This document shows, in pieces, positions 1,571 to 55,860 of a stretch of 64,000 nucleotides of DNA. The DNA comes from Macrostomum lignano (Eukaryota). Each line of letters begins with the position of its first letter. Within the stretch, counting starts at the first letter, position 1. The stretch lies in assembly GCA_002269645.1 (NCBI GenBank), contig NIVC01000505.1, forward strand, positions 133,988 to 197,987, in the 5' to 3' direction. Position numbers and translations under genes: made by a program. A model generated the notes under the pieces. That model was not told where the DNA came from and did no database searches. It was given only the letters and a program-made list of their open reading frames with translations.

Positions 1571-1828
1571 CAGAATTGTTAAATGCTTGGCTCATACATT
1601 TATGGGTTGCTCAAATGCCAAAGCACATAAGAGATCTGATATCCTTAGACTAAATAGCTGGATTTCAGATCGAATTCTGTTCTGCTTAAAAAATCGTTTT
1701 ATCAGAAATAGAAATCAACAATGGGTGACCGTACAAGGTCACAACCTATCTTTGTTCAAACATTTTTATCTGTAACTTTTTTCCACACATATCGTCACAA
1801 AAACACGTACGCGAGGATATATCCTTAC

Positions 1829-3075: not shown

Positions 3076-3149
3076 GGCCGAGTAGCTCAGTTGGTTAGAG
3101 CGTCGTGCTGATAACGCGAAGGTCGAGGGTTCGAGCCCCTCCCCGGCCA
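3076..3149 (+). tRNA. tRNA-Ile, anticodon GAT
   Basis: GGCCGAG/CCCGGCC acceptor stem (one mismatch). A box TAGCTCAGTTGG. Anticodon arm TCGTG-CT GAT AA-CGCGA (GAT at 3110-3112). T arm GAGGG-TTCGAGC-CCCTC, discriminator A, T6 Pol III terminator just downstream. Confidence 0.9.
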
Positions 3150-29414: not shown

Positions 29415-29504
29415 GGGAGAGTGAGAACCAGCAAGATTGGGATATACGAGAATAATTATAGTGAACAGTAAGCAGCAGAAATGTAAAATACAGTACGCGT
29501 TAAC

Positions 29505-31436: not shown

Positions 31437-31568
31437 GGCATTGAAATAACAGAGGGTGATCGAGTTCTGCTTGGACAACAAGTTAAAAGCCGAAAAATCT
31501 TGTCGACAACAAACCTCCGAAACTGAGAATGAAAAGAACCCCCGAAAATAAATGGAATAATAACTCAC

Positions 31569-33274: not shown

Positions 33275-33478
33275 CGGGCTTCGATTCCCGATCCCACTGG
33301 AACAATTTGTGTCCTTGAGCAAGACAATTAACTCTGCGTTGCTTTAGTTCATTCAGCTGTAAAATGGGTGCCAGCATTAGCTGGGGTAATTGAGGATGTG
33401 TGTGACGACCCCCCCCCCCCCCAGTCCTTGGACTGAATAGCTGCGGCTGAGCTGTCGGTTGCACATCTGCCTATTAGG
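33275..33478 (+). mobile_element. SINE family 1 copy, 5'-truncated with internal deletion
   Basis: Shares the B box, CORE-like body and 3' GCTGAGCTGTCGGTTGCACATCTGCCTATTAGG tail. Confidence 0.78.
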
Positions 33479-35417
33479 TCAGGTGTAATCAAATTTTGTA
33501 ATAAAAGAAACTGAAAATGATAAAATAAAGGTTTGGATCTTCGTATGGTTATATCACCAACTGACCAACTTTGTCGGCCAAAGTGAAACAGCCAGCAGTG
33601 CAGTTCCAAAACTACGAATATAGAGCGCATGTGTACATGTCAGCTGAGAAGCTTTAGATCAGACACGAGGGACAAGCTTAAACCGAAATTAATTATAGAT
33701 GTTTAGAATAGAAAAAATGCATTTCTATAGCACTGTCTGATTGGCAAAAAGCAATCAATCACTTTCCATAGCGGTGACAGCTGCTGCAGGATTTGGATTA
33801 GGCTAATTCTTCATATTTGTACGCGTACATGCCAACTGTATAACACAGTTAGTCGGAATCCACTCTCTCGCCTAAAAGTGTTGGGAAGTTGAATTGCTTT
33901 GAGACAAACACGCGCTTGCCAGCAGTATAGTGTCGCTCAGCTCAAATCGACCCGTGCAATGGAAAGTGAGCTGAACATTCTACAAAAGCCCGCACATTAC
34001 AGTAGCTAGAGACACATACGAGCTAAGCGCATACATAGAGTCTTTTGGATAGAAAGGGCGACAAGGTCGCTTGAAACTGGCTTGTGACTGACTGCAATGT
34101 CCAGCCAGTCAGAGTTCAATATACAGTAAGCATGCGTCATGGTTGAAGCTTTTTTTTAACAAAAAACACACTTTTTTCCTAGCCCAATTTACTCAAGCTC
34201 ATATGATTCATAATTCTCTCCTCAAGTCTCAATCGCCCTCTCGCCCTACCCACCTTCATTCTATGCTTACTCCGTCTCTACATGTAAGCCAGCCACCCCC
34301 TCCAATTTCCCTGTCTCTTCCCACTTTTCCCCCAGCCCCCACCCGGACAACATACAGTTTTCCGCACTGCTACACTGCATTGGCCAACCCCATTAGGCTT
34401 ACCCCATCGCCCCCTTCACACGTGCATTTACTAATTCTTTACCTGCTCTGAGCAGCACAACAAAAGAGAGACTTGTGCTTCTCTGTTAGATTTGCTAGCT
34501 AAAGAGGAAGGAGAAAGAAAGAAGTGTATAGTCATAGTCAGCATTGACTCCGCCCATGCTTATTATAAGCCACACGTAATGAGCATGTACGGCATACGGC
34601 ATAGTTGCCCCTATGCAGTTAGGAAGCATGTTTCAGCCAGCTATGAGAAAACTAAAGTGCCAGGATAATTTTAGCTAGTTCCATCACATCACGTTTGACT
34701 CCGACGACTGATGCTGACAAAAAAATCGTCCAGACTGACACTTCAACTCAACTCCATTCTCACTCTGCTCATGTTTAACCAGCCTCTTCAGCAGCATCAG
34801 CCACTTCTGCACTTTATTAACCCTAGCAAGCCAGTGCAAGTAACGATTCAGCAAAAGTGCTCTATAGTGCTTTAACTCAAGGCCAGACTACTAGGGTGGA
34901 CAATGGAACTGTGTGGTACATGAATAACTACCAATTAGCTACCAATTGTTGCATGACTATTTTTGACAAGCAGAAGACTCTAACAAAAGGAGAAGGCAGT
35001 TCTTTTCTTTTTAAAACAAGAAAACTCTCTTAACAAGCGCTTTCTTAGAAATATGCTTCACTAGTTAGTGAGTAGCTATTCTTGGCAAAGCAGTTTCAGT
35101 AGAAGCACTTTGTTGAGTCTTGAATGAGCAAACTAGTGGCTATGCATTTAGTCTTACCCTTCATTAACTTACGCGTCTCAATCCTCTCTATTGTATTTTA
35201 TTTTTTTAGGCAATTAAAATTAATTTTCATCTATCAACTGCAGATGATGTAACTGTTGCTTGTTTAAATAATTTTCTGTCATTTACCTGTGAACATTGTC
35301 GCCTTGATACAGTTTACATGCATTATATAGAATATCAAGGTCACAACAAACCTACTTTTCTGTAGAAACTACTGGTTTGTGAACTGAATTACTTAATTAA
35401 TTAATTGGCTTATGCAT

Positions 35418-35690
35418 GCCCTAATGGCCAGATGTGCAACCGACAGCTCAGCCGCAGCTATTGCGCGGCGCATCTGAAGGCTGCGTACGGCTGTTCAGTC
35501 CAAGGACTGCGGGGTCGCCACACACATCCTCAATTACCCCAGCTAATGCTGGCACCCATTTTACAGCTGAATGAACAGAAGCAATGCAGAGTTATGTGTC
35601 TTGCTGAAGGACACAAATTGTTCCAGCGGGATCGGGAATCGAACCCCTGAACTTCAGTCATAAGTGCGACGCTCTAACCACTAGGCTACA
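35418..35690 (-). mobile_element. SINE family 1 copy
   Basis: Reverse complement of the 52091 copy, including the tRNA-like head. Confidence 0.8.
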
Positions 35691-36376
35691 TCTCTGCTGA
35701 ATGAGCTTCTTGAGTTAATCGGTGGATTGGTCGAATACACTTCCCGACTAATCCAGCTAATTAAACCATCTGATAACATTTTGACCTTTGTACCTAATTA
35801 TCGATTTTCTCTTGCTCCTAAACTCATTTGACCTGTCATATAATTCCCTGTAATTTTTCACAACCAACTGTTTTGACTCCCTAATAACCAAACTCTTTCT
35901 AACATCGCTAATAAATTATGCCAAATATATATACGGCTCAATTCTCTCTCTCCTCAGTTAACCCCAGTAAGAAAGACTAGCTAACCACGCTCATATACAA
36001 AACAGAACGATACAGTTGAATGCAGCATTGCAATCACCCAGTGATGAGTTAACTAATTATCATTTCTTCCCCCATTCTCAATGTAGCTATAATGATGGCT
36101 GAGAGGCCTGGCTCTATAATTATATGTGTACTTTCAACAGTGCGTATCACTGCGACTTGGCTTGAATAAATTAATAACAGTCTATTTTAGCACACCTAAT
36201 CTTGGTTGGAAAACCGAAAGATGCTCGTTGATTGAGTTGACTGAATATGGAATATTGTCAACGAAGTCAAGGTGATTTTATATCGCTCTTCTTATCAACC
36301 AATACGTAGCATTTATCTAGTTGAAAAGAATGTAATTAAATGGCTAGATAAAGACTGAGAGATAGATTGACAGGCG

Positions 36377-39000: not shown

Positions 39001-39744
39001 TACAGGGGAGACACGCAGAGCCAGATGAGGAATAAGAAATGCCGCACAAGACATGCATTATATATTTCAACAATTGGCATGCTGCCAGAAAAACGCGCAA
39101 GCCGAATCGACTCCTAAGAGCGGAGAGTCGCAATGAGACTTCTCTCAGCCGAAATAGAAGCCAGCTCACTAATTAGAAATCAAAGATCCCGAGGGTGACA
39201 GGGTGGAGGGGGTTGGAGAGTTAGAATCTGAGCAGCCAGGACTCAACACTGCGGAACTGCAGAACAGACTGCTCTGCTAAAAATTTGCATACTAAGAGGC
39301 TCAGCCAGTCAAGACAGATCAGGAGAAAAAAGAAATGGAAACTGTGGGGACGAACAAGCAAGTGGCAGAGAGATAGAAAATTCAACTATAAAAGCTGGAT
39401 TGTGTCGGCTTGTGCAGCAAATGATAATGTCTTGCCAAGATATTAGGGAGATAAGTTTACTTGGCACTATGGCGGTCTCAAAGTCAAGTTGAAATATTTG
39501 GCTAATACACTGACTGTACTATTAAGAGATAGCTAGTGACACTAAAAAAATCCTATGGGGATTAAAGTGTCCTCAGAATTTCTTCCTGCAGAATAATAAA
39601 AGTCAGTTTGGATTTAAACAAAATTAGCCGTTTAGCTAGTGCAATAAAATCGATGTTAAAAATCGTTTTAGAAGATTAAATTTTCAATCTCTCTTCGGAA
39701 AGTATTAAGATCGAAACTTACGTTTATTAGATAGATCGAGAATC

Positions 39745-42700
39745 TTACTCTAGCGTGATCTAAAGATTCTTAGTATCAGCCGAGTCTTAGCCTAGCGTGA
39801 TCTAAAGATTCTTAGTATCAGCCGAGTCTTAGCCTAGCAAGATCTATAGATTCATAGAATCAGCCGAGAATCTTAGTCTAGCGAGATCTATAGATTCTTA
39901 GAATCAGCCGAGAATCTTACTCTAGCGAGATCTATGATTCATAGAATCAGCCAAGATTCTTAGTCTAGCGAGATCTATAGATTCGAAGAATCAGCCGAGT
40001 CTTAGTCTACCGAGATCTATAGATTCTTAGAATCAGCCGAGAATCTTACTCTAGCGTGATCTATAGATTCAGAAAAATCTGCCGAGAATCCTAGCCTAGC
40101 GAGATCTATAGATTCTTAGAATCAGCCGAGAATCCTAGCCTAGCGAGATCTATAGATTCTTAGAATCAACCGAGAATCTTAGTCTAGCTAGATCTATAGA
40201 TTCTTAGAATCAGCCGAGAATCTTAGTCTAGCGAGATCTATAGATTCATAGAATCAGCCGAGAATCTTAGTCTAGCGAGATCTATAGATTCTTAGAATCA
40301 GCCGAGAATCTTACTCTAGCGAGATCTATGATTCATAGAATCAGCCAAGATTCTTAGTCTAGCGAGATCTATAGATTCGAAGAATCAGCCGAGTCTTAGT
40401 CTACCGAGATCTATAGATTCTTAGAATCAGCCGAGAATCTTACTCTAGCGTGATCTATAGATTCAGAAAAATCTGCCGAGAATCCTAGCCTAGCGAGATC
40501 TATAGATTCTTAGAATCAGCCGAGAATCCTAGCCTAGCGAGATCTATAGATTCTTAGAATCAACCGAGAATCTTAGTCTAGCTAGATCTATAGATTCTTA
40601 GAATCAGCCGAGAATCTTAGTCTAGCGAGATCTATAGATTCATAGAATCAGCCGAGAATCTTAGTCTAGCGAGATCTATAGATTCTTAGAATCAGCCGAG
40701 AATCTTACTCTAGCGAGATCTATAGATTCTTAGAATCAGCCGAGAATCTTACTCTAGCGAGATCTATAGATTCTTAGAATCAGCCGAGAATCTTACTCTA
40801 GCGAGATCTATAGATTCTTAGAATCAGCCGAGAATCCTAGCCTTGAGAGATCTATAGATTCTTAGAATCAGCCGAGAATCTTCTTAGTCTAGCGAGATCT
40901 ATAGATTCTTAGAATCAGCCGAGAATCTTACTCTAGCGAGATCTATGGATTCTTAGAATCAGCCGACAATCTTAGTCTAGCGTGATCTATAGATTCTTAG
41001 AATCAGCCGAGAATCTTACTCTAGCGAGATCTATATAGATTCTTAGAATCAGCCGAGAATCTTACTCTAGCGAGATCTATATAGATTCTTAGAATCAGCC
41101 GAGAATCTTACTCTAGCGAGATCTATAGATTCTTAGAATCAGCCGAGAATCCTAGCCTAGCGAGATCTATAGATTCTTAGAATCAACCGAGAATCCTAGC
41201 CTAGCGAGATCTATAGATTCATAGAATCAGCCGAGAATCCTAGCCTAGCGAGATCTATAGATTCTTAGAATCAACCAAGATTCTTAGCCTAGCGAGATCT
41301 ATAGATTCATAGAATCAGCCAAGATTCTTAGTCTAGCGAGATCTATAGATTCTTAGAATCAGCCGAGAATCTTACTCTAGCGTGATCTAAAGATTCTTAG
41401 TATCAGCCGAGTCTTAGTCTAGCAAGATCTATAGATTCATAGAATCAGCCGAGAATCTTAGTCTAGCGAGATCTATAGATTCTTAGAATCAGCCGAGAAT
41501 CTTACTCTAGCGAGATCTATGATTCATAGAATCAGCCAAGATTCTTAGTCTAGCGAGATCTATAGATTCGAAGAATCAGCCGAGTCTTAGTCTACCGAGA
41601 TCTATAGATTCTTAGAATCAGCCGAGAATCTTACTCTAGCGTGATCTATAGATTCAGAAAAATCTGCCGAGAATCCTAGCCTAGCGAGATCTATAGATTC
41701 TTAGAATCAGCCGAGAATCCTAGCCTAGCGAGATCTATAGATTTTTAGAATCAACCGAGAATCTTAGTCTAGCTAGATCTATAGATTCTTAGAATCAGCC
41801 GAGAATCTTAGTCTAGCGAGATCTATAGATTCTTAGAATCAGCCGAGAATCTTACTCTAGCGAGATCTATAGATTCTTAGAATCAGCCGAGAATCTTACT
41901 CTAGCGAGATCTATAGATTCTTAGAATCAGCCGAGAATCTTACTCTAGCGAGATCTATAGATTCTTAGAATCAGCCGAGAATCTTACTCTAGCGAGATCT
42001 ATAGATTCTTAGAATCAGCCGAGAATCCTAGCCTTGAGAGATCTGTAGATTCTTAGAATCAACCGAGAATCTTAGTCTAGCGAGATCTATAGATTCTTAG
42101 AATCAGCCGAGAATCTTAGTCTAGCTAGATCTATAGATTCTTAGAATCAGCCGAGAATCTTCTTAGTCTAGCGAGATCTATAGATTCTTAGAATCAGCCG
42201 AGAATCTTACTCTAGCGAGATCTATGGATTCTTAGAATCAGCCGACAATCTTAGTCTAGCGTGATCTATAGATTCTTAGAATCAGCCGAGAATCTTACTC
42301 TAGCGAGATATATATAGATTCTTAGAATCAGCCGAGAATCTTACTCTAGCGAGATCTATATAGATTCTTAGAATCAGCCGAGAATCTTACTCTAGCGAGA
42401 TCTATATAGATTCTTAGAATCAGCCGAGAATCTTACTCTAGCGAGATCTATAGATTCTTAGAATCAGCCGAGAATCCTAGCCTAGCGAGATCTATAGATT
42501 CTTAGAATCAACCGAGAATCCTAGCCTAGCGAGATCTATAGATTCATAGAATCAGCCGAGAATCCTAGCCTAGCGAGATCTATAGATTCTTAGAATCAAC
42601 CAAGATTCTTAGCCTAGCGAGATCTATAGATTCATAGAATCAGCCAAGATTCTTAGTCTAGCGAGATCTATAGATTCATAGAATCAGCCGAGAATCTTAC

Positions 42701-44150
42701 TCTAGCGAGATCTATAGATTCATAGAATCAGCCAAGATTCTTAGTCTAGCGAGATCTATAGATTCTTAGAATCAGCCGAGAATCTTACTCTAGCGTGATC
42801 TATAGATTCAGAAAAATCTGCCGAGAATCCTAGCCTAGCGAGATCTATAGATTCTTAGAATCAGCCGAGAATCCTAGCCTAGCGAGATCTATAGATTTTT
42901 AGAATCAACCGAGAATCTTAGTCTAGCTAGATCTATAGATTCTTAGAATCAGCCGAGAATCTTAGTCTAGCGAGATCTATAGATTCTTAGAATCAGCCGA
43001 GAATCTTACTCTAGCGAGATCTATAGATTCTTAGAATCAGCCGAGAATCTTACTCTAGCGAGATCTATAGATTCTTAGAATCAGCCGAGAATCTTACTCT
43101 AGCGAGATCTATAGATTCTTAGAATCAGCCGAGAATCTTACTCTAGCGAGATCTATAGATTCTTAGAATCAGCCGAGAATCCTAGCCTTGAGAGATCTGT
43201 AGATTCTTAGAATCAACCGAGAATCTTAGTCTAGCGAGATCTATAGATTCTTAGAATCAGCCGAGAATCTTAGTCTAGCTAGATCTATAGATTCTTAGAA
43301 TCAGCCGAGAATCTTCTTAGTCTAGCGAGATCTATAGATTCTTAGAATCAGCCGAGAATCTTACTCTAGCGAGATCTATGGATTCTTAGAATCAGCCGAC
43401 AATCTTAGTCTAGCGTGATCTATAGATTCTTAGAATCAGCCGAGAATCTTACTCTAGCGAGATATATATAGATTCTTAGAATCAGCCGAGAATCTTACTC
43501 TAGCGAGATCTATATAGATTCTTAGAATCAGCCGAGAATCTTACTCTAGCGAGATCTATAGATTCTTAGAATCAGCCGAGAATCTTACTCTAGCGAGATC
43601 TATAGATTCTTAGAATCAGCCGAGAATCCTAGCCTAGCGAGATCTATAGATTCTTAGAATCAACCGAGAATCCTAGCCTAGCGAGATCTATAGATTCATA
43701 GAATCAGCCGAGAATCCTAGCCTAGCGAGATCTATAGATTCTTAGAATCAACCAAGATTCTTAGCCTAGCGAGATCTATAGATTCATAGAATCAGCCAAG
43801 ATTCTTAGTCTAGCGAGATCTATAGATTCATAGAATCAGCCGAGAATCTTACTCTAGCGAGATCTATAGATTCATAGAATCAGCCAAGATTCTTAGTCTA
43901 GCGAGATCTATAGATTCGAAGAATCAGCCAAGATTCTTACTCTAGCGAGATCTATAGATTCATAGAATCAGCCAAGATTCTTAGTCTAGCGAGATCTATA
44001 GATTCGAAGAATCAGCCAAGATTCTTAGTCTAGCGAGATCTATAGATTCTTAGAATCAGCCAAGATTCTTAGTCTAGCGAGATCTATAGATTCGAAGAAT
44101 CAGCCAAGATTCTTAGTCTAGCGAGATCTGTAGTCTCTTAGAATCAGCCG
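39745..44150. repeat. 44-nt palindrome-rich satellite, ~100 copies
   Basis: Unit TAGCGAGATCTATAGATTCTTAGAATCAGCCGAGAATCTTACTC. Confidence 0.97.
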
Positions 44151-44887
44151 AAAATAGCTGAAATATAGACCCTCAGCTATAGAAACATTATTAGAACATC
44201 TCCAGAAAAGGAATGCGGCACATCTAAAAGTCCAGGACAGGCTGGAACCAAGGTACAAAATTAGCTAATGCACGGAGGACAAACATCACACAGCTCGCCT
44301 CCAATCCACAGAGATCGATACAGCACTCTCCTTTCCTGCAGTTAGCTAGGCAGGACTGTCTGCTACAGTGAAACTATCGAAATAGCTTCGGCACTTGTGC
44401 AGCTCTCCATTCAAGACTTTTGAATACCCGCCCTGGTGGCAGTTCATTTGTCCATCTTTACTTTGCTACTGAAATATGCAATTATTGCCAAAAAACACAA
44501 TCGACCAATAGAAAAGAATCGATAAACTTCCTCTCCATATAGTTTAGTTTATAGCTAGTGTCTGTACGTACGCTATATAAGCTTTCAATTAATTTAGTTG
44601 GGCCTGAGCTGAAACGTAAGTAGCTATAACTCATCTAGGCGAGGAGGTGAACAGAATTGCAAGGAAACCGTTTTAACTAACCATCCTATAGTGTGTGCAG
44701 CCGTGTAGTTTGGAGGAAATTATCTGCATAAATTATTCAGCGTCAATACATACCTTTGCTTGCTTGGTAAGAAACACAAGTAGCTATGTAGAGCAGCTAT
44801 ATAACACAGAGCAGCAATTACCTAAAGACTAAGCGAGCATTTTATTAACAAAAACTATGCTGAAATACATCAGGTGCAACCTCGGAA

Positions 44888-45535
44888 TTGCTGAAGTTGT
44901 TGTCAGGAGCAATCCTGGGATGTCAGAAGTTGTTGTCAGGAGCAATCCTGGGATGTCAGAAGTTGTTGTCAGGAGCAATCCTGGGATGTCAGAAGTTGTT
45001 GTCAGGAGCAATCTAATGTCAAAAGTTGTTGTCAGGAGCAATCTTGGAATGTCAGAAGTTGTTGTCAGGAGCAATCTTGGAATGTCAGAAGTTGTTGTCA
45101 GGAGCAATCTTGAAATATCAGAAGTTGTTGTCAGGAGCAATCCTGGGATGTCAGAAGTTGTTGTCAGGAGCAATCCTGGGATGTCAGAAGTTGTTGTCAG
45201 GAGCAATCTTGGAATGTCAGAAGTTGTTGTCAGGAGCAATCCTGGGATGTCAGAAGTTGTTGTCAGGAGCAATCATGGAATGTCAGAAGTTGTTGTCAGG
45301 AGCAATCCTAGGATGTCAGAAGTTGTTGTCAGGAGCAATCTTGGAATGTCAGAAGTTGCTGTTAGGAGCAATCCTGAGATGTCAGAAGTTGTTATCCGGA
45401 GCAATCATGGAATGTCAGAAGTTGTTGTCAGGAGCAATCCTGGGATGTCAGAAGTTGTTGCAGGAGCAATCTTGGAATGTCAGAAGTTGTGGTCAGGAGC
45501 AATCTCCGAATGTCAGAACATTCTGTCAGGAGACG
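44888..45535. repeat. 33-nt minisatellite
   Basis: GTCAGGAGCAATCCTGGGATGTCAGAAGTTGTT units. Confidence 0.95.
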
Positions 45536-46059
45536 GCCTTTGACCACCCCAAAAGACAGCATACAAAAGAAGTCCCTACTTTCAGTAATAAAAAACGAAA
45601 AATAAAAATGCAAGAAAACTGTCAGTGCAAATAGGACAGCTAATTTTTTTCAACACACAGCAGACAGAAGGTTGCACCATATAAATGCTTCAAGATAACT
45701 GCACGATAAAGGTTTTATTTCATCATTTAATTAGCAGAAGACAATTTGACTACACGCAAAAATAGTGCGAAAATCCTTGAAATTCTACTGAAAACCTCAA
45801 GTCAGTAGTAAAATTCAAAATTGGTTTGCCAATTTTGCATGCGATTTTATAAGAAGACTTTCAGAGTCAGACTACCCCAGGATGATAAACGAAGACCGAA
45901 TCGAAATTGTATTTTTTATAGAATCTTTTCCCGATTGTAGCTAATGATTTTGATGTATTGGCTGGCTTAGATGTACGAATTGACGAAAGATATCGAATTA
46001 AATTGGTCACGTAGAGGACTGTCGCTTTGAAAGTTAGCAGACAGCAGTAAAATAGATAG

Positions 46060-46978
<919 letters not shown>

Positions 46979-47146
46979 TAATTACCCGATGGAAAATCTG
47001 GAGGGGTGTTGGAGGCTCACTTTTTGGTGCTAGCCTCTAATGATTTTTTTTATTTGGTTACACTAAACCAATGGGAGGCTAGAGGCTGGGTTAGAGGCTC
47101 GACTCTTGGGTGTCGCAGCCTCTAAAAATGACCCAGATTTGATGCT

Positions 47147-48540
47147 TGCAATTTGAGGCTCGTATTGGAGGCTCAATTAGAGGCTGGCAATTTGAGGCTC
47201 GTATTGGAGGCTCAATTAGAGGCTGGCAATTTGAGGCTCGTATTGGAGGCTCAATTAGAGGCTGGCAATTTGAGGCTCGTATTGGAGGCTCAATTAGAGG
47301 CTGGCAATTTGAGGCTCATATTGGAGGCTCAATTAGAGGCTGGCAATTTGAGGCTCGTATTGGAGGCTCAATTAGAGGCTGGCAATTTGAGGCTCGTATT
47401 GGAGGCTCAATTAGAGGCTGGCAATTTGAGGCTCGTATTGGAGGCTCAATTAGAGGCTGGCAATTTGAGGCTCGTTTTGGAGGCTCAATTAGAGACTGGC
47501 AATTTGAGGCTCGTTTTGGAGGCTCAATTAGAGGCTGGCGATTTGATGCTCAGTTAGAGGCTGAATTAGAGGCTCAATTAGAGGCTGGCGATTTGATGCT
47601 CAGTTAGAGGCTGAATTAGAGGCTCAATTAGAGGCTGGCGATTTGATGCTCAGTTAGAGGCTCAATTAGAGGCTCAATTAGAGGCTGGCGATTTGATGCT
47701 CAGTTAGAGGCTGAATTAGAGGCTCAATTAGAGGCTGGCGATTTGATGCTCAGTTAGAGGCTGAATTAGAGGCTGAATTAGAGGCTGGCGATTTGATGCT
47801 CAGTTAGAGGCTGAATTAGAGGCTCAATTAGAGGCTCAATTAGAGGCTGGCGATTTGATGCTCAGTTAGAGGCTGAATTAGAGGCTCAATTAGAGGCTGG
47901 CGATTTGATGCTTAGTTAGAGGCTGAATTAGAGGCTCAATTAGAGGCTGGCGATTTGATGCTCAGTTAGAGGCTGAATTAGAGGCTCAATTAGAGGCTCA
48001 ATTAGAGGCTGGCGATTTGATGCTCAGTTAGAGGCTCAATTAGAGGCTCAATTAGAGGCTCAATTAGAGGCTGGCGATTTGATGCTCAGTTAGAGGCTCA
48101 ATTAGAGGCTCAATTAGAGGCTCAATTAGAGGCTGGCGATTTGATGCTCAGTTAGAGGCTCAATTAGAGGCTCAATTAGAGGCTCAATTAGAGGCTGGCG
48201 ATTTGATGCTCAGTTAGAGGCTCAATTAGAGGCTCAATTAGAGGCTCAATTAGAGGCTGGCGATTTGATGCTCAGTTAGAGGCTCAATTAGAGGCTCAAT
48301 TAGAGGCTCAATTAGAGGCTCAATTAGAGGCTGGCGATTTGATGCTCAGTTAGAGGCTCAATTAGAGGCTCAATTAGAGGCTGGCGATTTGATGCTCAGT
48401 TAGAGGCTCAATTAGAGGCTCAATTAGAGGCTGGCGATTTGATGCTCAGTTAGAGGCTGAATTAGAGGCTCGATTAGAGGCTGGCGATTTGATGCTCAGT
48501 TAGAGGCTCAATTAGAGGCTCAATTAGAGGCTGGCGATTT
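47147..48540. repeat. Left subterminal array of the transposon
   Basis: 39-nt units, then variable units built from TTAGAGGCTCAA modules. Confidence 0.92.
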
Positions 48541-48603
48541 ATTAATAAGCTACGATTAATAAAACGAAAGAAAGAAAGAAAGAAAGAGGCTGGTTTCTTT
48601 TTA

Positions 48604-49072
48604 CGAGGGATGTGTCATAAATCTGCTGACAAACATCTCTAGTTTCTTTTGTATTTTTTTACTTGAGTTTATACTTTAGCCTAGGACTCTAGGGCTCATG
48701 ACAGTTATGTCTATGGAAAATATTACTTCTAGCCTTCATATAAGACAGAAAATCCTGTATCTTTCTACCTCCACCTCTACCTCTAGCATCTACCTCTGAT
48801 GAGAACATCCAGCGGGTGCTCTTAGAGAAAATTAAAGAGCCACTTCGTGGTCACTGCTATGGAAGCCTTTCTGCTTTTGGCTCTGCGATCAACCAGTGGT
48901 TGCGAAGTGTCCCCAGAAAATTCTTCGCCCAGGGCCTCGACAAGCTGCCTGAAAGATGGCACAAATGTGTTCAGCTCCGGGGTGACTATGTTGAGAAGTG
49001 TGACATTGATTATTAAGAGTTTCTTTTTTTACTTGTTTAATAGTCACATTTGTCAGCGAATCACAATCCTCG
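48604..49072 (+). mobile_element. Internally deleted mariner element nested in the larger transposon
   Basis: TA|CGAGGGATGTG...CACAATCCTCG|TA imperfect TIRs. Residual mariner transposase C-terminus LRGHCYGS...WLRSVPRKFFAQGLDKLPERWHKCVQLRGDYVEK at 48816-49016. Confidence 0.88.
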
Positions 49073-49101
49073 TACCGTTATCAGTTCTTACGTTTCGCCT
49101 A

Positions 49102-50181
49102 CTACAACACGGCCTCGGTCTCGCCACCGGCCTCGGTCTCGCCACCGGCCTCCGTCCCGCCACCGGCCTCTGTCCCGCCACCGGCCTCCGTCCCGCCACC
49201 GGCCTCCGTCTCGCCACCGGCCTCCGTCCCGCCACCGGCCTCCGTCTCGCCATCGGCCTCCGTCCCGCCACCGGTCTCGGTCTCGCCACCGGCCTCCGTC
49301 CCGCCACCGGCCTCCGTCCCGCCACCGGCCTCCGTCTCGCCACCGGCCTCCGTCCCGCCACCGGCCTCCGTCTCGCCACCGGCCTCCGTCTCGCCATCGG
49401 CCTCCGTCCCGCCACCGGCCTCCGTCTCGCCACCGGCGCCCGATAGTTTACTGCGGCCGTAAGCGGCGAGGCGATTGAAGTAAAGTGACAGGCGGCTTGG
49501 GTCTAGGCCGTTCGATTTAACGAATTGAATGACGGCCTCTTTCTGCATCGGGTCGACGGCCGACCGGTTGGTGCCATTCTTTACCTTTCGTCCTTCCCAG
49601 ACACACGTCTGAAGCTGCTCCTCAGAGAAGACAGCCCGCAGTATTGTGGAGTAAGCGACGCCAAGTAGGCGCTTTCGTTGAGCAACTTCCTTGGCATCGT
49701 GGTATCTCTTGATGGCTGTTTCAATACCGCGCATGCTGTCGTCCGTCACTTTTACGGTGGGGAACGCGTCAATGAGGGCGACCTTCTGTATCAAAGACAC
49801 CGGTTTTTTGATAGTGGTGCTACCGGACGTACTGTCACTCGCACGAGTGTTAACAGCCAAGGTGATCCCTAAGGACTCCACTTCAGTGGCCATGGAGGAG
49901 TCAACTATTGTGGCTGGCGAGTCGGAGCAGAATTCCGCCATCTTGGCGAGCTCGGTGCGTGCACGCGCGTGGATTTTGTTCGCGTCCTCTAGCATTTTAT
50001 CAACCGATGAGATGATCCGCACCGAGTTTCGGAAGGAAGTACAAGTCTGCCGATACTCGAGGGCAAGCTGGTGCAAATCAGCCTTCATGCTGGATACTTT
50101 TCCTTCGACAGACTGCGCCTCCGTGTCATGGTCACGTGAAAGCTCATCCAATGCCGCCTGGAGCCTCTCCTTGTCTTCCAT
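49102..50181 (-). CDS. Transposon-borne coiled-coil + BEN-domain-like protein (359 aa) with 6-aa repeat tail
   Basis: Intact ORF. aa ~172-246 (ILRAVFSEEQLQTCVWEG...AVDPMQKEAVIQFV...FNRLAAYGRSK) fits the BEN pattern. N-terminal helical or coiled-coil region; EAGG(G/E)T tail from an 18-nt repeat. Confidence 0.7.
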   Translation of the reverse strand: MEDKERLQAALDELSRDHDTEAQSVEGKVSSMKADLHQLALEYRQTCTSFRNSVRIISSVDKMLEDANKIHARARTELAKMAEFCSDSPATIVDSSMATEVESLGITLAVNTRASDSTSGSTTIKKPVSLIQKVALIDAFPTVKVTDDSMRGIETAIKRYHDAKEVAQRKRLLGVAYSTILRAVFSEEQLQTCVWEGRKVKNGTNRSAVDPMQKEAVIQFVKSNGLDPSRLSLYFNRLAAYGRSKLSGAGGETEAGGGTEADGETEAGGETEAGGGTEAGGETEAGGGTEAGGGTEAGGETETGGGTEADGETEAGGGTEAGGETEAGGGTEAGGGTEAGGGTEAGGETEAGGETEAVL

Positions 50182-50184
50182 GAG

Positions 50185-51350
50185 TGCTGTGCCTCTAATC
50201 CAGCCTCTAATTGAGCCTCGAATCCAGTCTCTAATTGAGCCTCGAATCCAGTCTCTAATCCAGCCTCTAATTCAGTCTCTAATACAGCCTCTAATCCAGC
50301 CTCTAATTGAGCCTCGAATCCAGTCTCTAATCCAGCCTCGAATCCAGTCTCTAATCCAGCCTCTAATTCAGTCTCTAATACAGCCTCTAATCCAGCCTCT
50401 AATTGAGCCTCGAATCCAGTCTCTAATTGAGCCTCGAATCCAGTCTCTAATCCAGCCTCTAATTCAGTCTCTAATACAGCCTCTAATCCAGCCTCTAATT
50501 GAGCCTCGAATCCAGTCTCTAATCCAGCCTCGAATCCAGTCTCTAATCCAGCCTCTAATTCAGTCTCTAATACAGCCTCTAATCCAGCCTCTAATTGAGC
50601 CTCAAATCCAGTCTCTAATTGAGCCTCGAATCCAGTCTCTAATCCAGCCTCTAATTCAGTCTCTAATACAGCCTCTAATCCAGCCTCTAATTGAGCCTCG
50701 AATCCAGTCTCTAATTGAGCCTCGAATCCAGTCTCTAATCCAGCCTCTAATTCAGTCTCTAATCCAGCCTCTAATCCAGCCTCGAATTTAGCCTCTAAAT
50801 TAAACATCAAATCCAGGCTCAAATAAAGCCTCTAATCCAGCCTCGAATTTAGCCTCTAAATTAAACATCAAATCCAGGCTCAAATAAAGCCTCTAATCCA
50901 GCCTCGAATTTAGCCTCTAAATTAAACGTCAAATCCAGGCTCAAATAAAGCCTCTAATCCAGCCTCGAATTTAGCCTCTAAATTAAACGTCAAATCCAGG
51001 CTCAAATAAAGCCTCTAATCCAGCCTCGAATTTAGCCTCTAAATTAAACGTCAAATCCAGGCTCAAATAAAGCCTCTAATCCAGCCTCGAATTTAGCCTC
51101 TAAATTAAACGTCAAATCCAGGCTCAAAAAAGCCTCTAATCCAGCCTCGAATTTAGCCTCTAAATTAAACGTCAAATCCAGGCTCAAAAAAAGCCTCTAA
51201 TCCAGCCTCGAATTTAGCCTCTAAATTAAACGTCAAATCCAGGCTCAAATAAAGCCTCTAATCCAGCCTCGAATTTAGCCTCTAAATTAAACGTCAAATC
51301 CAGGCTCAAAAAAAGCCTCTAATCCAGCCTCGAATCTAGCCTCTATCTCA
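50185..51350. repeat. Right subterminal array of the transposon
   Basis: 12-nt modules (CAGCCTCTAATC, GAGCCTCGAATC), then ~59-nt units. Motif is inverted relative to the left array. Confidence 0.92.
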
Positions 51351-51592
51351 GACTCTAAGTTGAACCTCTACTCTAGCCTCAAATCCAGCATCAAATACAA
51401 TCTCTTTTGAGGTTAAAGATTATTTTTGAGGCTAGCATCTAACCAGCCTCAAAAAATCCACTTTGAGGTTCATTCGAGGCTGCGTTTGAGGCTAGGGTAA
51501 AAATTAGAGGCTGCCCTTTTCCCATCGGGTTAGACACCAGTAGCCAGTTAGACACGCGAGGTTACAAAGACTCCGATGAGACTGCAGACAAA

Positions 51593-52001
51593 TCACTCTA
51601 CGCAAGCTTCCTCTAACCGGAGCCGCTTCTCGTCTTGAACGGCATCGCCGTCACCAGTCGAAGCCAGCTGCTTCAATTGCCGCTTGCTGTCCGCTCGTTC
51701 GCGCATCTCCTCGAAGCTGGCCTGCAGCTGACGCTTGAGCAGCGGTCGGTGCTGCCTACAGCGCAGCTCGGGCAGCAGCCCGGTACTCAGATGAGACCAA
51801 TTCAACGTTGGCGGAGTCAACGGCAGATGATCGACAGCTAGACGAGCAAGGCAGGATCGGACAGTCAGCTCAGTCCAGTGACGCTGCAAGGTGACCCTGA
51901 GATGCTCGCGGGCGTCCGCTGAGCAACGCCAATCGAGATGATCGAATTCGGCTTTAGATAAGATTAATGGGAGACCATCGGCCAACACATATTCTGGCTT
52001 C
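51593..52001 (-). CDS. PUS3: tRNA pseudouridine(38/39) synthase, exon 3
   Basis: tcacag|G AAG CCA GAA TAT gives RKPEYVLADGLPLIL and later HRPLLKRQ; TGA at 51593-51595. Joined CDS is 1437 nt (478 aa). Confidence 0.92.
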
Positions 52002-52090
52002 CTGTGAAGGTTGGTGTAAAAAAAATTGAGTCACAAGTGCATCACGTGAGTTGTAGAATCGTAAGAAGTGGTCCAAGAGTCGTTGTTTAA

Positions 52091-52375
52091 GTTAGCCTAG
52101 TAGTTAGAGTGTCGGACTCACGACTTCAAGGTCGGGGGTTCGATTCCTGATCCTGCACTCGGAACAATTTGTGTCCTTGAGCAAGACACTTACTCGTAAC
52201 TCTGCATTGCTTTAGCTCGCCCAGCTGTAAAATGGGTGCCAGCATTAGCTGGGGTAATTGAGGGTGCGTGTGGTGACCCCCCCCCCCAGTCCTTGGACTG
52301 AACAGCCGTACGCAGCCTTCAGATGCGCCGCGCAATTGCGGCTGAGCTGTCGGTTGCACATCTGCCTATTAGGCA
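52091..52375 (+). mobile_element. tRNA-derived SINE family 1 (CORE-like body), near full length, in PUS3 intron 2
   Basis: A box TAGCCTAGTAGTTAGAG, B box GGTTCGATTCC, then TGTGTCCTTGAGCAAGACACTT...CTGTAAAATGGG. Four copies in the window. Confidence 0.8.
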
Positions 52376-52555
52376 TTCGTTGATTTTTATTCATAAAGTG
52401 ACGGATTCTACAGCGACTCTTTCACGTCTCATATACCGTCTACCTGTAAGAGTCACGTCTTTCCTATTCTATCTGTGTGATCTGCAACGACTTTTGAACG
52501 CCTCTTGGCGTTCGTAACGTTTTCATTAAAAGACGTCGACCAGTATAAAACTCAC

Positions 52556-53253
52556 CTAGGAGTAGCATTCACATCCAGCAGTTTATCAACAATACTTGGC
52601 TCTTCAAGCCCTTGACCAACCAGAGCCAGCACAGAGAACATATTCCTAATCTGATGATAAAGAAAGGCCGTAGCTCGAACTCGGAACGCGAACATCTGAT
52701 TATGATCTGATGCTTGACTGCAGTAATCAACAGGTTCAATATCGCACTCCATTACAGTTCGACAATAATTAGCCTGATCTGGGGAGAATTTTGAAAAATT
52801 CCTGAAATCGTGCTCCCCAACAAAGCGTTTACAGGCGTCTCGCATAGCTTCTATATTGAACGTTGACCGAGGAAAATGGTACAGGTATTCCCGGCCTTTA
52901 CAGGCGAATCTGGCACTGAAATCTGGCGTCACAGGTGCCCAAGCCAGCACTCGCAGCTCGCGCGGCAGCACTCTATTAAGCGGACCAACAGGATCCAGTT
53001 CGTTAGCCTCCGTGTCCTCACTAGACGGAGGCGTTCGCCTCTTGCCAATGTCCGGTCCAGTGTCCGGTATGCAACCGGTGTTGCAGTCGGACAGTAGGCT
53101 GCGAATATTTAACGATACAACATTAGCCAGGGCTGAGACGCCTTTGTCAGTTCGAGCGCAAGACACTAGATTGCAAGTGTCTATCGATTCGATTAATTGT
53201 ACGCGTTTTAAACCGTCGCACAAGCGGCCGAGTACCGTGTTGTCTGTGTTGTC
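52556..53253 (-). CDS. PUS3: tRNA pseudouridine(38/39) synthase, exon 2 (catalytic)
   Basis: gaccag|GAC...AG|gtgagt. Motifs RTDKGVSA, LNRVLP, FSARF, GEHDFRNF, AFLYHQIR of the TruA/Pus3 family. Confidence 0.95.
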
Positions 53254-53374
53254 CTGGTCAGGGGGGTAGTGATTAGTCATTTATTTGTGTGTCTACGACT
53301 CTACGTAAACATTTTCAACCTTGATCGTCTAAATATACTCTTAACTGTGTTTATAAATTGTTTGTGCCCTCCTT

Positions 53375-55745
53375 GGACACCCGGTGTCTGATTGTGCCCT
53401 CCAGCGACACCTACTGTTGTGCCCTCCAGCGACACTTAGTGTCTGATTGTGCCCTCCTTGGACACCAAGTGTCTGATTGTGCCCTCCTTGGACACCCAGT
53501 GTCTGATTGTGCCCTCCAGCGACACCTAGTGTTGTGCCCTCCAGCGACACTTAGTGTCTGATTGTGCCCTCCTTGGACACCCAGTGTCTGATTGTGCCCT
53601 CCTTGGACACCCAGTGTCTGATTGTGCCCTCCAGCGACACCTAGTGTTGTGCCCTCCAGCGACACTTAGTGTCTGATTGTGCCCTCCTTGGACACCTAGT
53701 GTCTGATTGTGCCCTCCTTGGACACCCAGTGTCTGATTGTGCCCTCCTTAGACACCTAGTGTCTGATTGTGCCCTCCTTAGACACCTAGTGTCTGATTGT
53801 GCCCTCCTTGAACACCCAGTGTCTGATTGTGCCCTCCTTGGACACCTAGTGTCTGATTGTGCCCTCCTTAGACACCTAGTGTCTGATTGTGCCCTCCTTA
53901 GACACCTAGTGTCTGATTGTGCCCTCCTTGAACACCCAGTGTCTGATTGTGCCCTCCTTGGACACCTAGTGTCTGATTGTGCCCTCCTTAGACACCTAGT
54001 GTCTGATTGTTCCCTCCAGCGACACCCAGTGTCTGATTGTGCCCTCCTTGGACACCTAGTGTCTAATTGTGCCCAGTGTCTGATTGTTCCCTCCAGCGAC
54101 ACCCAGTGTCTGATTGTTCCCTCCAGCGACACCCAGTGTCTGATTGTTCCCTCCAGCGACACCCAGTGTCTGATTGTTCCCTCCAGCGACACCCAGTGTC
54201 TGATTGTGCCCTCCTTGGACACCTAGTGTCTAATTGTGCCCAGTGTCTGATTGTTCCCTCCAGCGACACCCAGTGTCTGATTGTTCCCTCCAGCGACACC
54301 CAGTGTCTGATTGTTCCCTCCAGCGACACCCAGTGTCTGATTGTTCCCTCCAGCGACACCCAGTGTCTGATTGTTCCCTCCAGCGACACTCAGTGTCTGA
54401 TTGTTCCCTCCAGCGACACCCAGTGTCTGATTTTTCCCTCCAGCGACACCCAGTGTCTGATTGTGCCCTCCTTGGACACCTAGTGTCTGATTGTTCCCTC
54501 CAGCGACACCCAGTGTCTGATTGTGCCCTCCTTGGACACCCAGTGTCTGATTGTTCCCTCCAGCGACACCCAGTGTCTGATTGTGCCCTCCTTGGACACC
54601 CAGTGTCTGATTGTTCCCTCCAGCGACACCCAGTGTCTGATTGTGCCCTCCTTGGACACCTAGTGTCTAATTGTGCCCAGTGTCTGATTGTACCCTCCAG
54701 CGACACCCAGTGTCTGATTGTTCCCTCCAGCGACACCCAGTGTCTGATTGTTCCCTCCAGCGACACCCAGTGTCTGATTGTTCCCTCCAGCGACACCCAG
54801 TGTCTGATTGTTCCCTCCAGCGACACTCAGTGTCTGATTGTTCCCTCCAGCGACACCCAGTGTCTGATTTTCCCTCCAGCGACACCCAGTGTCTGATTGT
54901 GCCCTCCTTGGACACCTAGTGTCTGATTGTTCCCTCCAGCGACACCCAGTGTCTGATTGTGCCCTCCTTGGACACCCAGTGTCTGATTGTTCCCTCCAGC
55001 GACACCCAGTGTCTGATTGTGCCCTCCTTGGACACCCAGTGTCTGATTGTTCCCTCCAGCGACACCCAGTGTCTGATTGTGCCCTCCTTGGACACCTAGT
55101 GTCTAATTGTGCCCAGTGTCTGATTGTACCCTCCAGCGACACCCAGTGTCTGATTGTTCCCTCCAGCGACACCCAGTGTCTGATTGTTCCCTCCAGCGAC
55201 ACCCAGTGTCTGATTGTTCCCTCCAGCGACACTCAGTGTCTGATTGTTCCCTCCAGCGACACCCAGTGTCTGATTGTTCCCTCCAGCGACACCCAGTGTC
55301 TGATTGTTCCCTCCAGCGACACCCAGTGTCTGATTGTTCCCTCCAGCGACACCCAGTGTCTGATTGTGCCCTCCTTGGACACCTAGTGTCTAATTGTGCC
55401 CTCCTTGGACACCTAGTGTCTGATTGTTCCCTCCAGGGACACCCAGTGTCTGATTGTGCCCTCCATGGACACCCGGTGTCTGATTGTGCCCTCCTTGGAC
55501 ACCCGGTGTCTGATTGTGCCCTCCATGGACACCCGGTGTCTGATTGTGCCCTCCTTGGACACCCGGTGTCTGATTGTGCCCTCCTTGGACACCTAGTGTC
55601 TGATTGTGCCCTCCTTGGACACCTAGTGTCTGATTGTGCCCTCCTTGGACACCCAGTGTTGTGCCCTCCAGCGACACCCAGTGTCTGATTGTACCCTCCA
55701 GGGACACCCAGCGTCTGATTGTAAGCTTCATGGACACCTAGTCTA
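53375..55745. repeat. 30-nt minisatellite filling PUS3 intron 1
   Basis: GTGTCTGATTGT(G/T)CCCTCC(TTG/AGC)GACACC(C/T)A units. Confidence 0.97.
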
Positions 55746-55860
55746 ATTGTACCTTCCATGGACACCCAGTATGATACCTTCCATGGAGACCCAGCGTGGG
55801 TGTGCCCTTCTGAGAAACCCTGTGTCTATATTACACCCGGACAGTGTTAAAAACCCCTAC

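What the first reader, a model, noticed from the sequence alone, without database searches (positions are those of the whole stretch)
46985..51529. Transposase-less DNA transposon carrying an intact BEN-domain-like gene
Seen: matching ends CCCGATGG(G)AAAA, a TTA duplication on both flanks (46982-46984, 51530-51532) and one uninterrupted 359-aa ORF whose aa ~172-246 read like a BEN DNA-binding domain. No transposase of the element itself is recognisable. Established: a TWA 3-bp TSD is typical of PIF/Harbinger, while 3-bp TSDs plus subterminal repeats typify CACTA/EnSpm. Both families encode a second DNA-binding protein. Inference: this is a deletion derivative of a lineage whose accessory protein is a coiled-coil+BEN protein, or an element that captured and mobilises a host BEN gene. 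The intact frame suggests recent activity or selection.
Basis: partly seen in the sequence, partly recalled or inferred. Interest (0 to 1): 0.8.

Follow-up and report, generated by a model that had tools for sequence, protein, structure and literature searches.

The report
Gene-carrying transposon shell in a flatworm
A 4.5-kb stretch of Macrostomum lignano (flatworm) DNA has the build of a cut-and-paste transposon with no transposase: short inverted ends, a duplicated TTA and two long inverted arrays of one 12-base motif around a single conserved gene. Neither the proposed BEN DNA-binding domain nor any second copy of the element could be shown.

Summary
The window is Macrostomum lignano DNA. 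CCCGATGG(G)AAAA occurs only at 46985 and, inverted, at 51529. TTA flanks both ends. An intact 359-aa ORF lies at 49102-50181 (-).

- About 2.6 kb of the element is two inverted arrays of a 12-bp unit (ATTNGAGGCTNN; 96 + 61 exact GAGGCT), a foldback-like build.
- An internally deleted mariner is nested at 48604-49072.
- The element sits 63 bp beyond the stop codon of a PUS3 gene.

The ORF is a real, constrained gene. A homologue at about 40-64% identity exists in one public read assembly, and dN/dS is 0.13 over the C-terminal domain.

The BEN call is not supported. Pfam BEN, PDB sequence and profile searches, hhalign and Foldseek gave nothing significant. The only hint is a sub-threshold hit to DUF4806 (E 0.086), a family described as a BEN subtype.

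No second copy, empty site or autonomous partner could be searched for with these tools. The one other occurrence is the same locus in the Mlig_3_7 assembly.

Best reading: a non-autonomous terminal-inverted-repeat transposon of an undescribed family. Its TTA duplication fits PIF/Harbinger; its termini are not CACTA. It carries an accessory or captured coiled-coil gene. Interest is moderate.

The parts
46982..46984 (.). Left copy of the putative target-site duplication, TTA
   Evidence: Read directly. Identical junction in L001.
46985..46996 (+). Left terminal inverted repeat, CCCGATGGAAAA
   Evidence: The only + strand CCCGATGG in the window. Chance test.
46997..47148 (+). Left subterminal region with scattered GAGGCT/AGCCTC motif copies in both orientations
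47149..48540 (+). Left-arm tandem arrays of the 12-bp unit ATTNGAGGCTNN, with higher-order periods of 50, 62 and 100 bp. The whole left arm holds 96 exact GAGGCT.
   Evidence: Tandem Repeats Finder; motif counts and position matrix.
48541..48601 (.). Short A-rich spacer between the left arm and the nested mariner
48604..49072 (+). Nested, internally deleted mariner. It has imperfect terminal repeats (CGAGGGATGTG...CTGACAAA) and TA duplications at 48602-48603 and 49073-49074. At 48816-49016 it keeps the C-terminal codons of the transposase.
   Evidence: Matches Mos1 transposase residues 302-345, E 5e-5. Ends aligned. Translation.
49102..50181 (-). Intact 359-aa ORF, the same locus as PAA60039.1 / BOX15_Mlig026769g4
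   Evidence: The only homologue among 1.84 billion representatives is on contig L002. dN/dS 0.13.
49924..50181 (-). ORF aa 1-86: long N-terminal helix, probably a coiled coil
   Evidence: AlphaFold helix over residues 2-86, block-mean pLDDT 79-88 over the first 40 residues and falling towards residue 86.
49435..49743 (-). ORF aa 147-249: conserved five-helix C-terminal domain. It holds the ILRAVFSEEQL motif and the proposed BEN-like region.
   Evidence: 64-74% identity to L002 here, against 39% in the N-terminal part. Helices. DUF4806 at E 0.086. No BEN hit.
49105..49434 (-). ORF aa 250-359: low-complexity (GGETEA)n tail encoded by an in-frame 18-bp tandem repeat of about 18 copies
   Evidence: The tail of L002 is a different low-complexity sequence.
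50191..51389 (-). Right-arm tandem arrays of the same 12-bp unit in inverted orientation, with higher-order periods of 61 and 96 bp. They start 9 bp upstream of the ORF's ATG. The whole right arm holds 61 exact copies of the hexamer.
   Evidence: Inverted matches to the left arm of 73 nt at 81-85%.
51390..51516 (-). Right subterminal region with scattered motif copies
51517..51529 (-). Right terminal inverted repeat, CCCGATGGGAAAA on the minus strand
51530..51532 (.). Right copy of the putative target-site duplication, TTA
51593..53280 (-). Neighbouring host gene PUS3 (tRNA pseudouridine 38/39 synthase). It is on the same strand as the ORF and lies upstream of it. Its apparent stop codon is 63 bp from the right end of the element.
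   Evidence: Pfam PseudoU_synth_1, E 5e-22. Best database hits are PUS3 at ~42% identity.

Best explanation
The region is one insertion of a non-autonomous (transposase-less) class II DNA transposon of an undescribed Macrostomum family, lying in the 3' flank of the PUS3 gene.

Shown:
- 12/13-bp terminal inverted repeats (5'-CCC...GGG-3') and a TTA on each flank.
- Two arms in which one 12-bp unit (ATTNGAGGCTNN) has been amplified into 1.2-1.4-kb tandem arrays in mutually inverted orientation, giving a foldback-like architecture.
- An interior that, apart from a later nested deleted mariner, holds only one intronless gene. Its product has an N-terminal coiled coil, a disordered linker, a conserved ~100-aa five-helix domain and a repeat tail.
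- That gene is conserved under purifying selection and is annotated from transcript evidence.

Inferred:
- The element was, or still is, mobilised in trans by a DDE transposase encoded elsewhere. That enzyme would recognise the tips and cut at TTA. This fits PIF/Harbinger best, but the superfamily is not established.
- The arrays are amplified copies of the binding site of the element's DNA-binding factor.
- The ORF is that factor. It would be a dimeric, sequence-specific binder playing the part that the Myb-like protein plays in Harbinger or TnpA in En/Spm, possibly with a BEN/DUF4806-type fold.
- It is transcribed from the right arm or by read-through from PUS3, followed by trans-splicing.
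For: - Terminal repeats and TTA flanks are unique in the window and sit exactly at the limit of the motif-bearing DNA. The chance expectation is 0.043 for the 8-mer plus flank alone.
- Strict polarity: GAGGCT 96 times in the left arm, AGCCTC 61 times in the right arm, background elsewhere in the 64 kb. The shared core ATTNGAGGCT has TT at 98-100% in both arms.
- The unique interior is about 1.18 kb, of which 1.08 kb is the ORF.
- The ORF is real. It is an annotated transcript-based gene (PAA60039.1; method in PMC5730564). It has a homologue on L002, and dN/dS is 0.13 with dS 1.36 over 77 codons.
- The architecture of coiled coil plus C-terminal helical domain comes from AlphaFold secondary structure.
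- PIF elements have short (~15 bp) terminal repeats and a second protein of ~300-400 aa. In Harbinger3_DR that protein binds a subterminal motif (PMC9710019).
- DUF4806 is the single Pfam family listed for the domain (E 0.086). It is described as a BEN subtype (PMC10723407 and PMC10789644).
Against: - Only one insertion is known. The second occurrence (L001) is the same locus.
- No empty site, no other copy and no autonomous partner could be looked for. A single 3-bp flank match has a 1/64 prior.
- No other M. lignano protein resembles the ORF. That fits a single-copy gene better than an amplified family, although database coverage of this species is incomplete: its PUS3 is also missing.
- The termini do not match the G-rich starts I recall for PIF/mPing (own knowledge).
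- No Myb/SANT, BEN or other DNA-binding family is significantly detected.
- The structure models have low confidence (pLDDT 54 and 59.5).
- Binding of the protein to the arrays is pure inference.
Confidence: 0.5

Rival explanations
1. A fixed, single-copy cellular (or long-domesticated) gene lies inside the immobile relic of an old transposon. The ends and arrays are leftovers, the element no longer moves, and the protein has a host function unrelated to transposition.
For: - Only one locus is found in the annotated M. lignano proteome and in 5.8 billion clustered proteins.
- There is purifying selection against a homologue of another lineage.
- That homologue's contig shows no GAGGCT arrays in its 106-bp and 69-bp flanks, and its frame stays open further upstream.
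- A nested mariner shows the element has been resident for some time.
Against: - The terminal repeats still match at 12 of 13 positions and the TTA flanks are intact.
- The arrays reach to within 9 bp of the ATG, which is an odd promoter context for a host gene.
- L002 is only 1128 bp, so its wider context is unknown.
Confidence: 0.25
2. Gene capture: a non-autonomous element picked up an intronless copy of a host coiled-coil gene and carries it as passive cargo, in the manner of Pack-type elements.
For: - The window ORF starts where the L002 homologue is still in open frame upstream. This could mean a 5'-truncated capture.
- The ORF has no intron and is tightly framed by the arms.
Against: - No parental host paralogue is detectable in M. 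lignano.
- Captured fragments are usually partial and decay, whereas this ORF is intact with a conserved domain.
Confidence: 0.1
3. Not a transposon. A gene is flanked by two satellite arrays that happen to be inverted, in a genome where simple and tandem repeats make up about 15%. The 8-bp inverted match and the TTA flanks are coincidence.
For: - The window is full of unrelated tandem arrays, and tandem repeats are abundant in this genome (PMC5730564).
- An inverted 8-mer alone is expected about 3 times in the edge windows.
- There is only one instance.
Against: - The same 10-bp core occurs in both arrays in opposite orientation and nowhere else in the 64 kb.
- The only 8-mer pair with a matching flank lies exactly at the outer limit of the motif-bearing DNA (expected 0.043), and it extends by AAAA.
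- The left flank changes abruptly to an (AGAC)n microsatellite.
Confidence: 0.1
4. A piggyBac-related element whose TTAA duplication has decayed to TTA on both sides.
For: The termini are 5'-CCC...GGG-3'. piggyBac and IS1380 share CC..GG termini and 4-bp duplications (PMC10045372). TTA is three quarters of TTAA.
Against: It needs two independent one-base changes at the two junctions. The left junction is identical in two assemblies. piggyBac is not known for long subterminal arrays (own knowledge).
Confidence: 0.05

Closest known systems
PIF/Harbinger non-autonomous elements and their Myb-like accessory protein (for example Harbinger3_DR)
   Same: A 3-bp TTA flank (TWA target); short terminal repeats of ~13-15 bp; a repeated short motif in both subterminal regions; a second, non-catalytic protein of 300-400 aa that in Harbinger3_DR binds that motif (PMC9710019).
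   Different: No PIF-type DDE transposase and no Myb/SANT/MADF domain are detected. The termini start CCC and not with the G-rich starts I recall for PIF/mPing. The motif is amplified to about 157 copies. Only one insertion is known.
Foldback-type elements (Drosophila FB, Galileo; from my own knowledge, not tested)
   Same: Long inverted arms built from tandem sub-repeats whose higher-order period changes inward; unique tips; an optional central coding segment.
   Different: The reported duplications are longer (9 bp for FB, 7 bp for Galileo). The arms here share only the 10-bp core and are 81-85% complementary over 73-nt stretches.
En/Spm (CACTA) elements with the TnpA protein
   Same: A 3-bp duplication and many subterminal motif copies bound by an accessory protein.
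   Different: The termini are not CACTA/CAC. No Transposase_21/24 or TnpA-like match.
BEN-solo factors (Insensitive, Elba1/2, BEND5/6) and DUF4806 proteins
   Same: The order coiled coil then a C-terminal helical domain of ~100 aa. A local LxxxF(S/T)xEEL...G motif lines up with BANP's LLDYLFHREVQ. The best Pfam family is DUF4806, a reported BEN subtype.
   Different: No statistically significant sequence, profile or fold match to any BEN domain. The L002 homologue gives no DUF4806 hit.
piggyBac superfamily
   Same: CC..GG termini and a TTA(A)-like flank (for the family features).
   Different: The duplication is 3 bp, not 4 bp. No piggyBac transposase is present.

Membership tests
PIF/Harbinger | 3-bp target-site duplication of TWA (TTA/TAA) | tested here: met
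   TTA on both flanks. One insertion only, so the length and preference are not established statistically.
PIF/Harbinger | Short terminal inverted repeats (~15 bp) | tested here: met
   12/13-bp repeats with one indel. Family feature from PMC9710019.
PIF/Harbinger | PIF-type DDE transposase, in the element or in an autonomous partner sharing the ends | not testable with these tools
   None in the element. No searchable M. lignano genome was available to look for partners.
PIF/Harbinger | Second ORF with a Myb/SANT/MADF domain | tested here: not met
   Pfam scans of the whole ORF and of the C-terminal domain list no Myb, SANT or MADF family at E<=10.
CACTA / EnSpm (CMC) | Termini 5'-CACTA (CAC...) | tested here: not met
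   The termini are CCCGATGG...CCATCGGG.
CACTA / EnSpm (CMC) | 3-bp duplication and subterminal repeats | tested here: met
piggyBac | TTAA 4-bp duplication | tested here: not met
   The left junction reads AATTA|CCC and the right reads GGG|TTAGAC.
piggyBac | 5'-CC..GG-3' termini | tested here: met
   CCC...GGG. Family feature from PMC10045372.
Foldback-like elements | Long inverted arms made of tandem sub-repeats | tested here: met
   Arrays at 47149-48540 and 50191-51389, inverted relative to each other.
Foldback-like elements | Longer duplication (7-9 bp; from own knowledge) | tested here: not met
   Only TTA matches directly at the junctions.
BEN domain (PF10523) | Match to the Pfam BEN model at or above the gathering score | tested here: not met
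   BEN is not listed even at E<=10 for the whole ORF, the domain alone, or the L002 domain.
BEN domain (PF10523) | Profile or sequence similarity to solved BEN domains | tested here: not met
   A control query retrieved BANP, Insv, BEND6, BEND3, NAC1 and Bsg25A. The ORF domain and the two-sequence profile retrieved none of them. hhalign probability was 0.13%.
BEN domain (PF10523) | BEN fold | tested here: inconclusive
   The models are too poor (pLDDT 54 and 59.5). The NACC1 BEN domain 8yzs_A appears at E=1.0, rmsd 4.6 Å over 88 columns, within the noise. No BEN chain is among the 50 listed hits for the domain model.
DUF4806 (PF16064; reported BEN subtype) | Match at or above the gathering score (25 bits) | tested here: inconclusive
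   13.6 bits, E 0.086, ORF aa ~174-211 against profile positions 45-73 of 90. It is the only family listed for the domain. The L002 homologue gives no hit.
Any mobile transposon family | Several copies at different loci with the same ends, or an empty site | not testable with these tools
   The only other occurrence is the same locus. The metagenome scan gave only chance hits. The route through a PUS3 homeologue failed.
mariner (nested remnant at 48604-49072) | Transposase homology, TA duplication and terminal inverted repeats | tested here: met
   Mos1 transposase residues 302-345 at E 5e-5. TA at 48602-3 and 49073-4, with imperfect ~30-bp terminal repeats.

The most novel reading that the evidence does not exclude
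The element stands for an undescribed family of PIF/Harbinger-like (or unclassified) DNA transposons. In this family the accessory DNA-binding protein would be a dimeric coiled-coil protein with a divergent BEN/DUF4806-type domain, not a Myb-like protein. It would recognise the ATTAGAGGCT unit that the element has amplified about 157-fold in its arms. That would be a BEN-type transposon accessory factor caught still inside its transposon, and so a plausible source of BEN-solo transcription factors by domestication.
Probability: 0.12. Interest if true: 0.7.

Novelty: new member of a known kind. Interest (0 to 1): 0.4.

Why it matters
If mobility and DNA binding were shown, this would be a compact natural example of a transposon that keeps only its DNA-binding accessory gene together with a hugely amplified set of that protein's likely binding sites. 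It would help in studying how such proteins are domesticated into transcription factors. It would also offer a candidate pairing of terminal repeats with an accessory protein in M. lignano, a transgenesis model species. As it stands it is one insertion of an unclassified non-autonomous element carrying a lineage-restricted orphan gene. That is worth a curated repeat-library entry and a corrected gene model (PAA60039.1 is out of frame after about residue 150), but it is not a surprise to a transposon specialist.

Tried and rejected
1. Independent copy. The only database match, PAA60039.1 on NIVC01002201.1, proved to be the same locus: colinear into the left flank and 99.25% identical. Its frameshift is one missing G among many 1-nt indels, most likely assembly error.
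2. Empty site through a homeologous PUS3 locus. The last protein search found no M. lignano PUS3 at all.
3. Copies through a 21-nt array motif in metagenome contigs. Nine single hits, none with arrays or the terminal repeats, so chance.
4. BEN domain. Pfam on the whole ORF, the domain and the homologue; PDB phmmer and a two-sequence profile; hhalign against BANP, Insv and BEND6; AlphaFold of aa 1-255 and aa 138-255 followed by Foldseek against PDB and BFVD. All non-significant. A control query did recover the BEN chains.
5. TPR reading of KEAVIQFVKSNGLDPSRLSLYFNRLAAYGR. Hop/STI1 at E 0.014 for the whole chain, with per-domain E above 9. Rejected as chance.
6. Another element of the same family at 33276-35647, where a 2-mismatch match to the terminal repeat lies. 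It is a pair of tRNA-derived SINE-like repeats, unrelated.
7. Base composition as a sign of foreign origin. GC3 of ORF aa 1-250 is 0.64, within the range of neighbouring host ORFs (0.47-0.64).
8. Reading 'g4' in the gene name as four genomic copies. The naming scheme reflects clusters of transcriptional units and genes cut out of polycistronic units, so it is ambiguous.
9. Literature. No paper links BEN to Harbinger-type elements or describes this M. lignano element.

Full report
**Source and identity.** The ORF at 49102-50181 (-) matches one named protein, PAA60039.1 'hypothetical protein BOX15_Mlig026769g4' of Macrostomum lignano. The end of its contig (NIVC01002201.1, locus L001) is colinear with window 39737-50696. 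Over 44001-50696 the two are 99.25% identical, and the alignment runs through the left end of the element into the flanking (AGAC)n microsatellite and a 44-bp satellite. L001 is therefore the same locus in the Mlig_3_7 assembly and not a second copy. The left junction (..GGACAGTAATTA|CCCGATGGAAAATC..) reads identically in both. The deposited protein leaves the frame after about residue 150 because L001 lacks one G (GCGCGG read as GCGCG). L001 also has many 1-nt indels in the arrays, so this is most likely assembly error.

**Checking the observation.**
- CCCGATGGAAAA starts at 46985, and TTTTCCCATCGGG ends at 51529. The 8-mer or its complement occurs nowhere else in the 64 kb. Allowing two mismatches gives only chance-level extra hits.
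- TTA lies immediately outside both ends.
- In 2000 shuffles of 450-bp edge windows, an inverted 8-mer pair that also has a 3-bp direct flank is expected 0.043 times. Exactly one is observed, and it is this pair.
- The boundaries are further supported by the motif content. GAGGCT occurs 96 times in the left arm and AGCCTC 61 times in the right arm, against 0-2 per kb per strand elsewhere. Motif copies reach to within 15-28 bp of each tip and stop there.
- The 359-aa ORF is uninterrupted.

**Anatomy.** Reading inward from either tip:
- a 12-13-bp terminal inverted repeat;
- about 130-150 bp of unique sequence with scattered motif copies in both orientations;
- then 1.4 kb (left, 47149-48540) or 1.2 kb (right, 50191-51389) of tandem arrays.

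The arrays have different higher-order periods (50, 62 and 100 bp on the left; 61 and 96 bp on the right). They share a 12-bp unit with the core ATTNGAGGCT, in which TT is 98-100% conserved and GAGGCT was the anchor used for the count. The arms are mutually inverted, with 73-nt stretches 81-85% complementary. This is a foldback-like build.

The interior has three parts:
- a 61-bp A-rich spacer;
- a nested, internally deleted mariner at 48604-49072. It has TA duplications at 48602-3 and 49073-4, imperfect ~30-bp terminal repeats, and the last codons of its transposase, which match Mos1 residues 302-345 at E 5e-5;
- the ORF, whose stop lies 27 bp from the mariner duplication and whose ATG lies 9 bp from the right-arm array.

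Without the mariner, the unique interior is about 1.18 kb, of which 1.08 kb is ORF. The element lies 63 bp beyond the apparent stop codon of a PUS3 gene on the same strand.

**The protein.**
- AlphaFold predicts one long helix over residues 2-86 (block-mean pLDDT about 79-88 over the first 40 residues), then a disordered stretch, then five helices between about residues 147 and 249. Overall confidence is low: pLDDT 54 for aa 1-255 and 59.5 for aa 138-255.
- Residues 250-359 are a (GGETEA)n tail encoded by an in-frame 18-bp tandem repeat.
- An exhaustive HMMER search of 1.84 billion representative proteins found only the protein itself and two fragments, P0005 and P0006. Both lie on one 1128-bp Logan contig (L002, run SRR31628403, organism not known to me).
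- That contig encodes a homologue. Identity is 39% over the N-terminal 180 residues and 64-74% over the C-terminal domain. It is split by two frameshifts at homopolymers, and its frame stays open further upstream.
- Over 77 aligned codons of the C-terminal domain, dN/dS is 0.13 with dS about 1.4. The gene has therefore been under purifying selection.
- M. lignano gene models are built from transcripts (PMC5730564), so the locus is transcribed. Nearly 7% of assembled transcripts in this species are multi-gene precursors resolved by trans-splicing. Read-through from PUS3 is therefore a plausible route of expression. This is an inference.

**Is the domain BEN?** Every formal test failed.
- Pfam lists no BEN for the whole ORF, for the 109-aa domain, or for the frame-corrected L002 domain at E<=10.
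- A rough BEN consensus used as a control retrieved BANP, Insensitive, BEND6, BEND3, NAC1 and Bsg25A from the PDB. The ORF domain and a two-sequence profile retrieved none of these.
- hhalign of that profile against three real BEN domains gave probability 0.13%.
- Foldseek gave no hit better than E 0.25. The NACC1 BEN domain appeared at E 1.0 in one search, among four-helix-bundle noise.
- The one positive hint: the only Pfam family listed for the isolated domain is DUF4806 (E 0.086, 13.6 bits, cut-off 25), over ORF aa ~174-211. Two papers describe DUF4806 as a structural subtype of BEN, citing Pan et al. 2023. It would be a notable coincidence for the best of 24,736 models to fall in the family proposed beforehand. 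But the score is sub-threshold, it rests on the same ~35 residues, and it is not reproduced with the homologue.
- I put the chance of a BEN-type fold at roughly 45%.

**Which superfamily?**
- A TTA flank and short terminal repeats fit PIF/Harbinger. So does a non-catalytic protein of 300-400 aa that binds a subterminal motif (PMC9710019).
- The CACTA termini are absent, which speaks against En/Spm.
- Zator and AcademX also make 3-bp duplications, and piggyBac shares CC..GG termini but makes TTAA (PMC10045372). A decayed TTAA would need two independent changes.
- With one insertion and no transposase, the superfamily cannot be assigned.

**What could not be done.**
- No searchable M. lignano genome was available. 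Copy number, empty sites and autonomous partners therefore remain open.
- The attempt to reach homeologous loci through PUS3 failed because no M. lignano PUS3 is in the protein collection. This also weakens the argument from the absence of further ORF copies in that collection.
- A metagenome scan with a 21-nt array motif gave only chance hits.

**Verdict.**
- The sequence features are real and non-random. The best reading is a non-autonomous terminal-inverted-repeat transposon with foldback-like, motif-amplified arms that carries one conserved coiled-coil gene.
- That the protein binds the arrays, and that it has a BEN fold, are hypotheses and not findings.
- A fixed single-copy gene inside a dead transposon shell is the main rival, and the two readings overlap in part.
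- Interest is moderate at 0.4. The family and the protein are undescribed, but transposase-less elements that carry an accessory or captured ORF are a familiar category.

Noticed in passing
window 48604-49072 (TA at 48602-48603 and 49073-49074): An internally deleted mariner is nested in the element, 27 bp beyond the ORF's stop codon. It keeps imperfect ~30-bp terminal repeats and an open C-terminal transposase fragment (Mos1 residues 302-345, E 5e-5).
   Followed up: yes
L001 ~955-970 against window ~49725-49740: The deposited protein PAA60039.1 (199 aa) is out of frame after about residue 150, because the Mlig_3_7 contig lacks one G. The window reads through to 359 aa. The public gene model is probably truncated by an assembly indel.
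   Followed up: partly
window 33276-33505 and 35393-35700: Two inverted copies of a repeat (137-nt arms, 93% complementary). The head of the repeat looks tRNA-derived (..GGTTCGATTCCCGATCCC..), so it is probably a SINE family. It is unrelated to the element despite a 2-mismatch match to the terminal repeat.
   Followed up: partly
window 16428-21212; 39737-44155; 29501-31453; 53362-55770; 46054-46978: Very large tandem arrays: 23 bp x 208, 44 bp x 100, 15/30 bp x 65, and 30 bp x ~80. An (AGAC)n microsatellite of ~230 units ends 6 bp from the left terminal repeat. Much of the window is satellite DNA.
   Followed up: no
window 51593-53280 (-): A PUS3 (tRNA pseudouridine 38/39 synthase) gene lies immediately upstream on the same strand. 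No M. lignano PUS3 is present in the 5.8-billion-protein collection, so it may be unannotated in the public assembly.
   Followed up: partly
window 49450-49540 (ORF aa 214-243): KEAVIQFVKSNGLDPSRLSLYFNRLAAYGR resembles a single TPR motif of Hop/STI1 (E 0.014 for the whole chain, per-domain E above 9). It is the most conserved stretch between the ORF and its homologue. Judged to be chance.
   Followed up: partly
L002 (Logan SRR31628403 contig, 1128 bp): This is the only homologue of the ORF anywhere. It has two frameshifts at homopolymer runs inside the best-conserved domain, and an open frame continuing upstream with no ATG. It is either a pseudogene copy or carries read errors. The source organism is unknown.
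   Followed up: partly
window 3076-3149 (+) and 1746-2501 (-): A tRNA-Ile(GAT) gene and an ORF with two SAM domains (E 1.7e-14).
   Followed up: no
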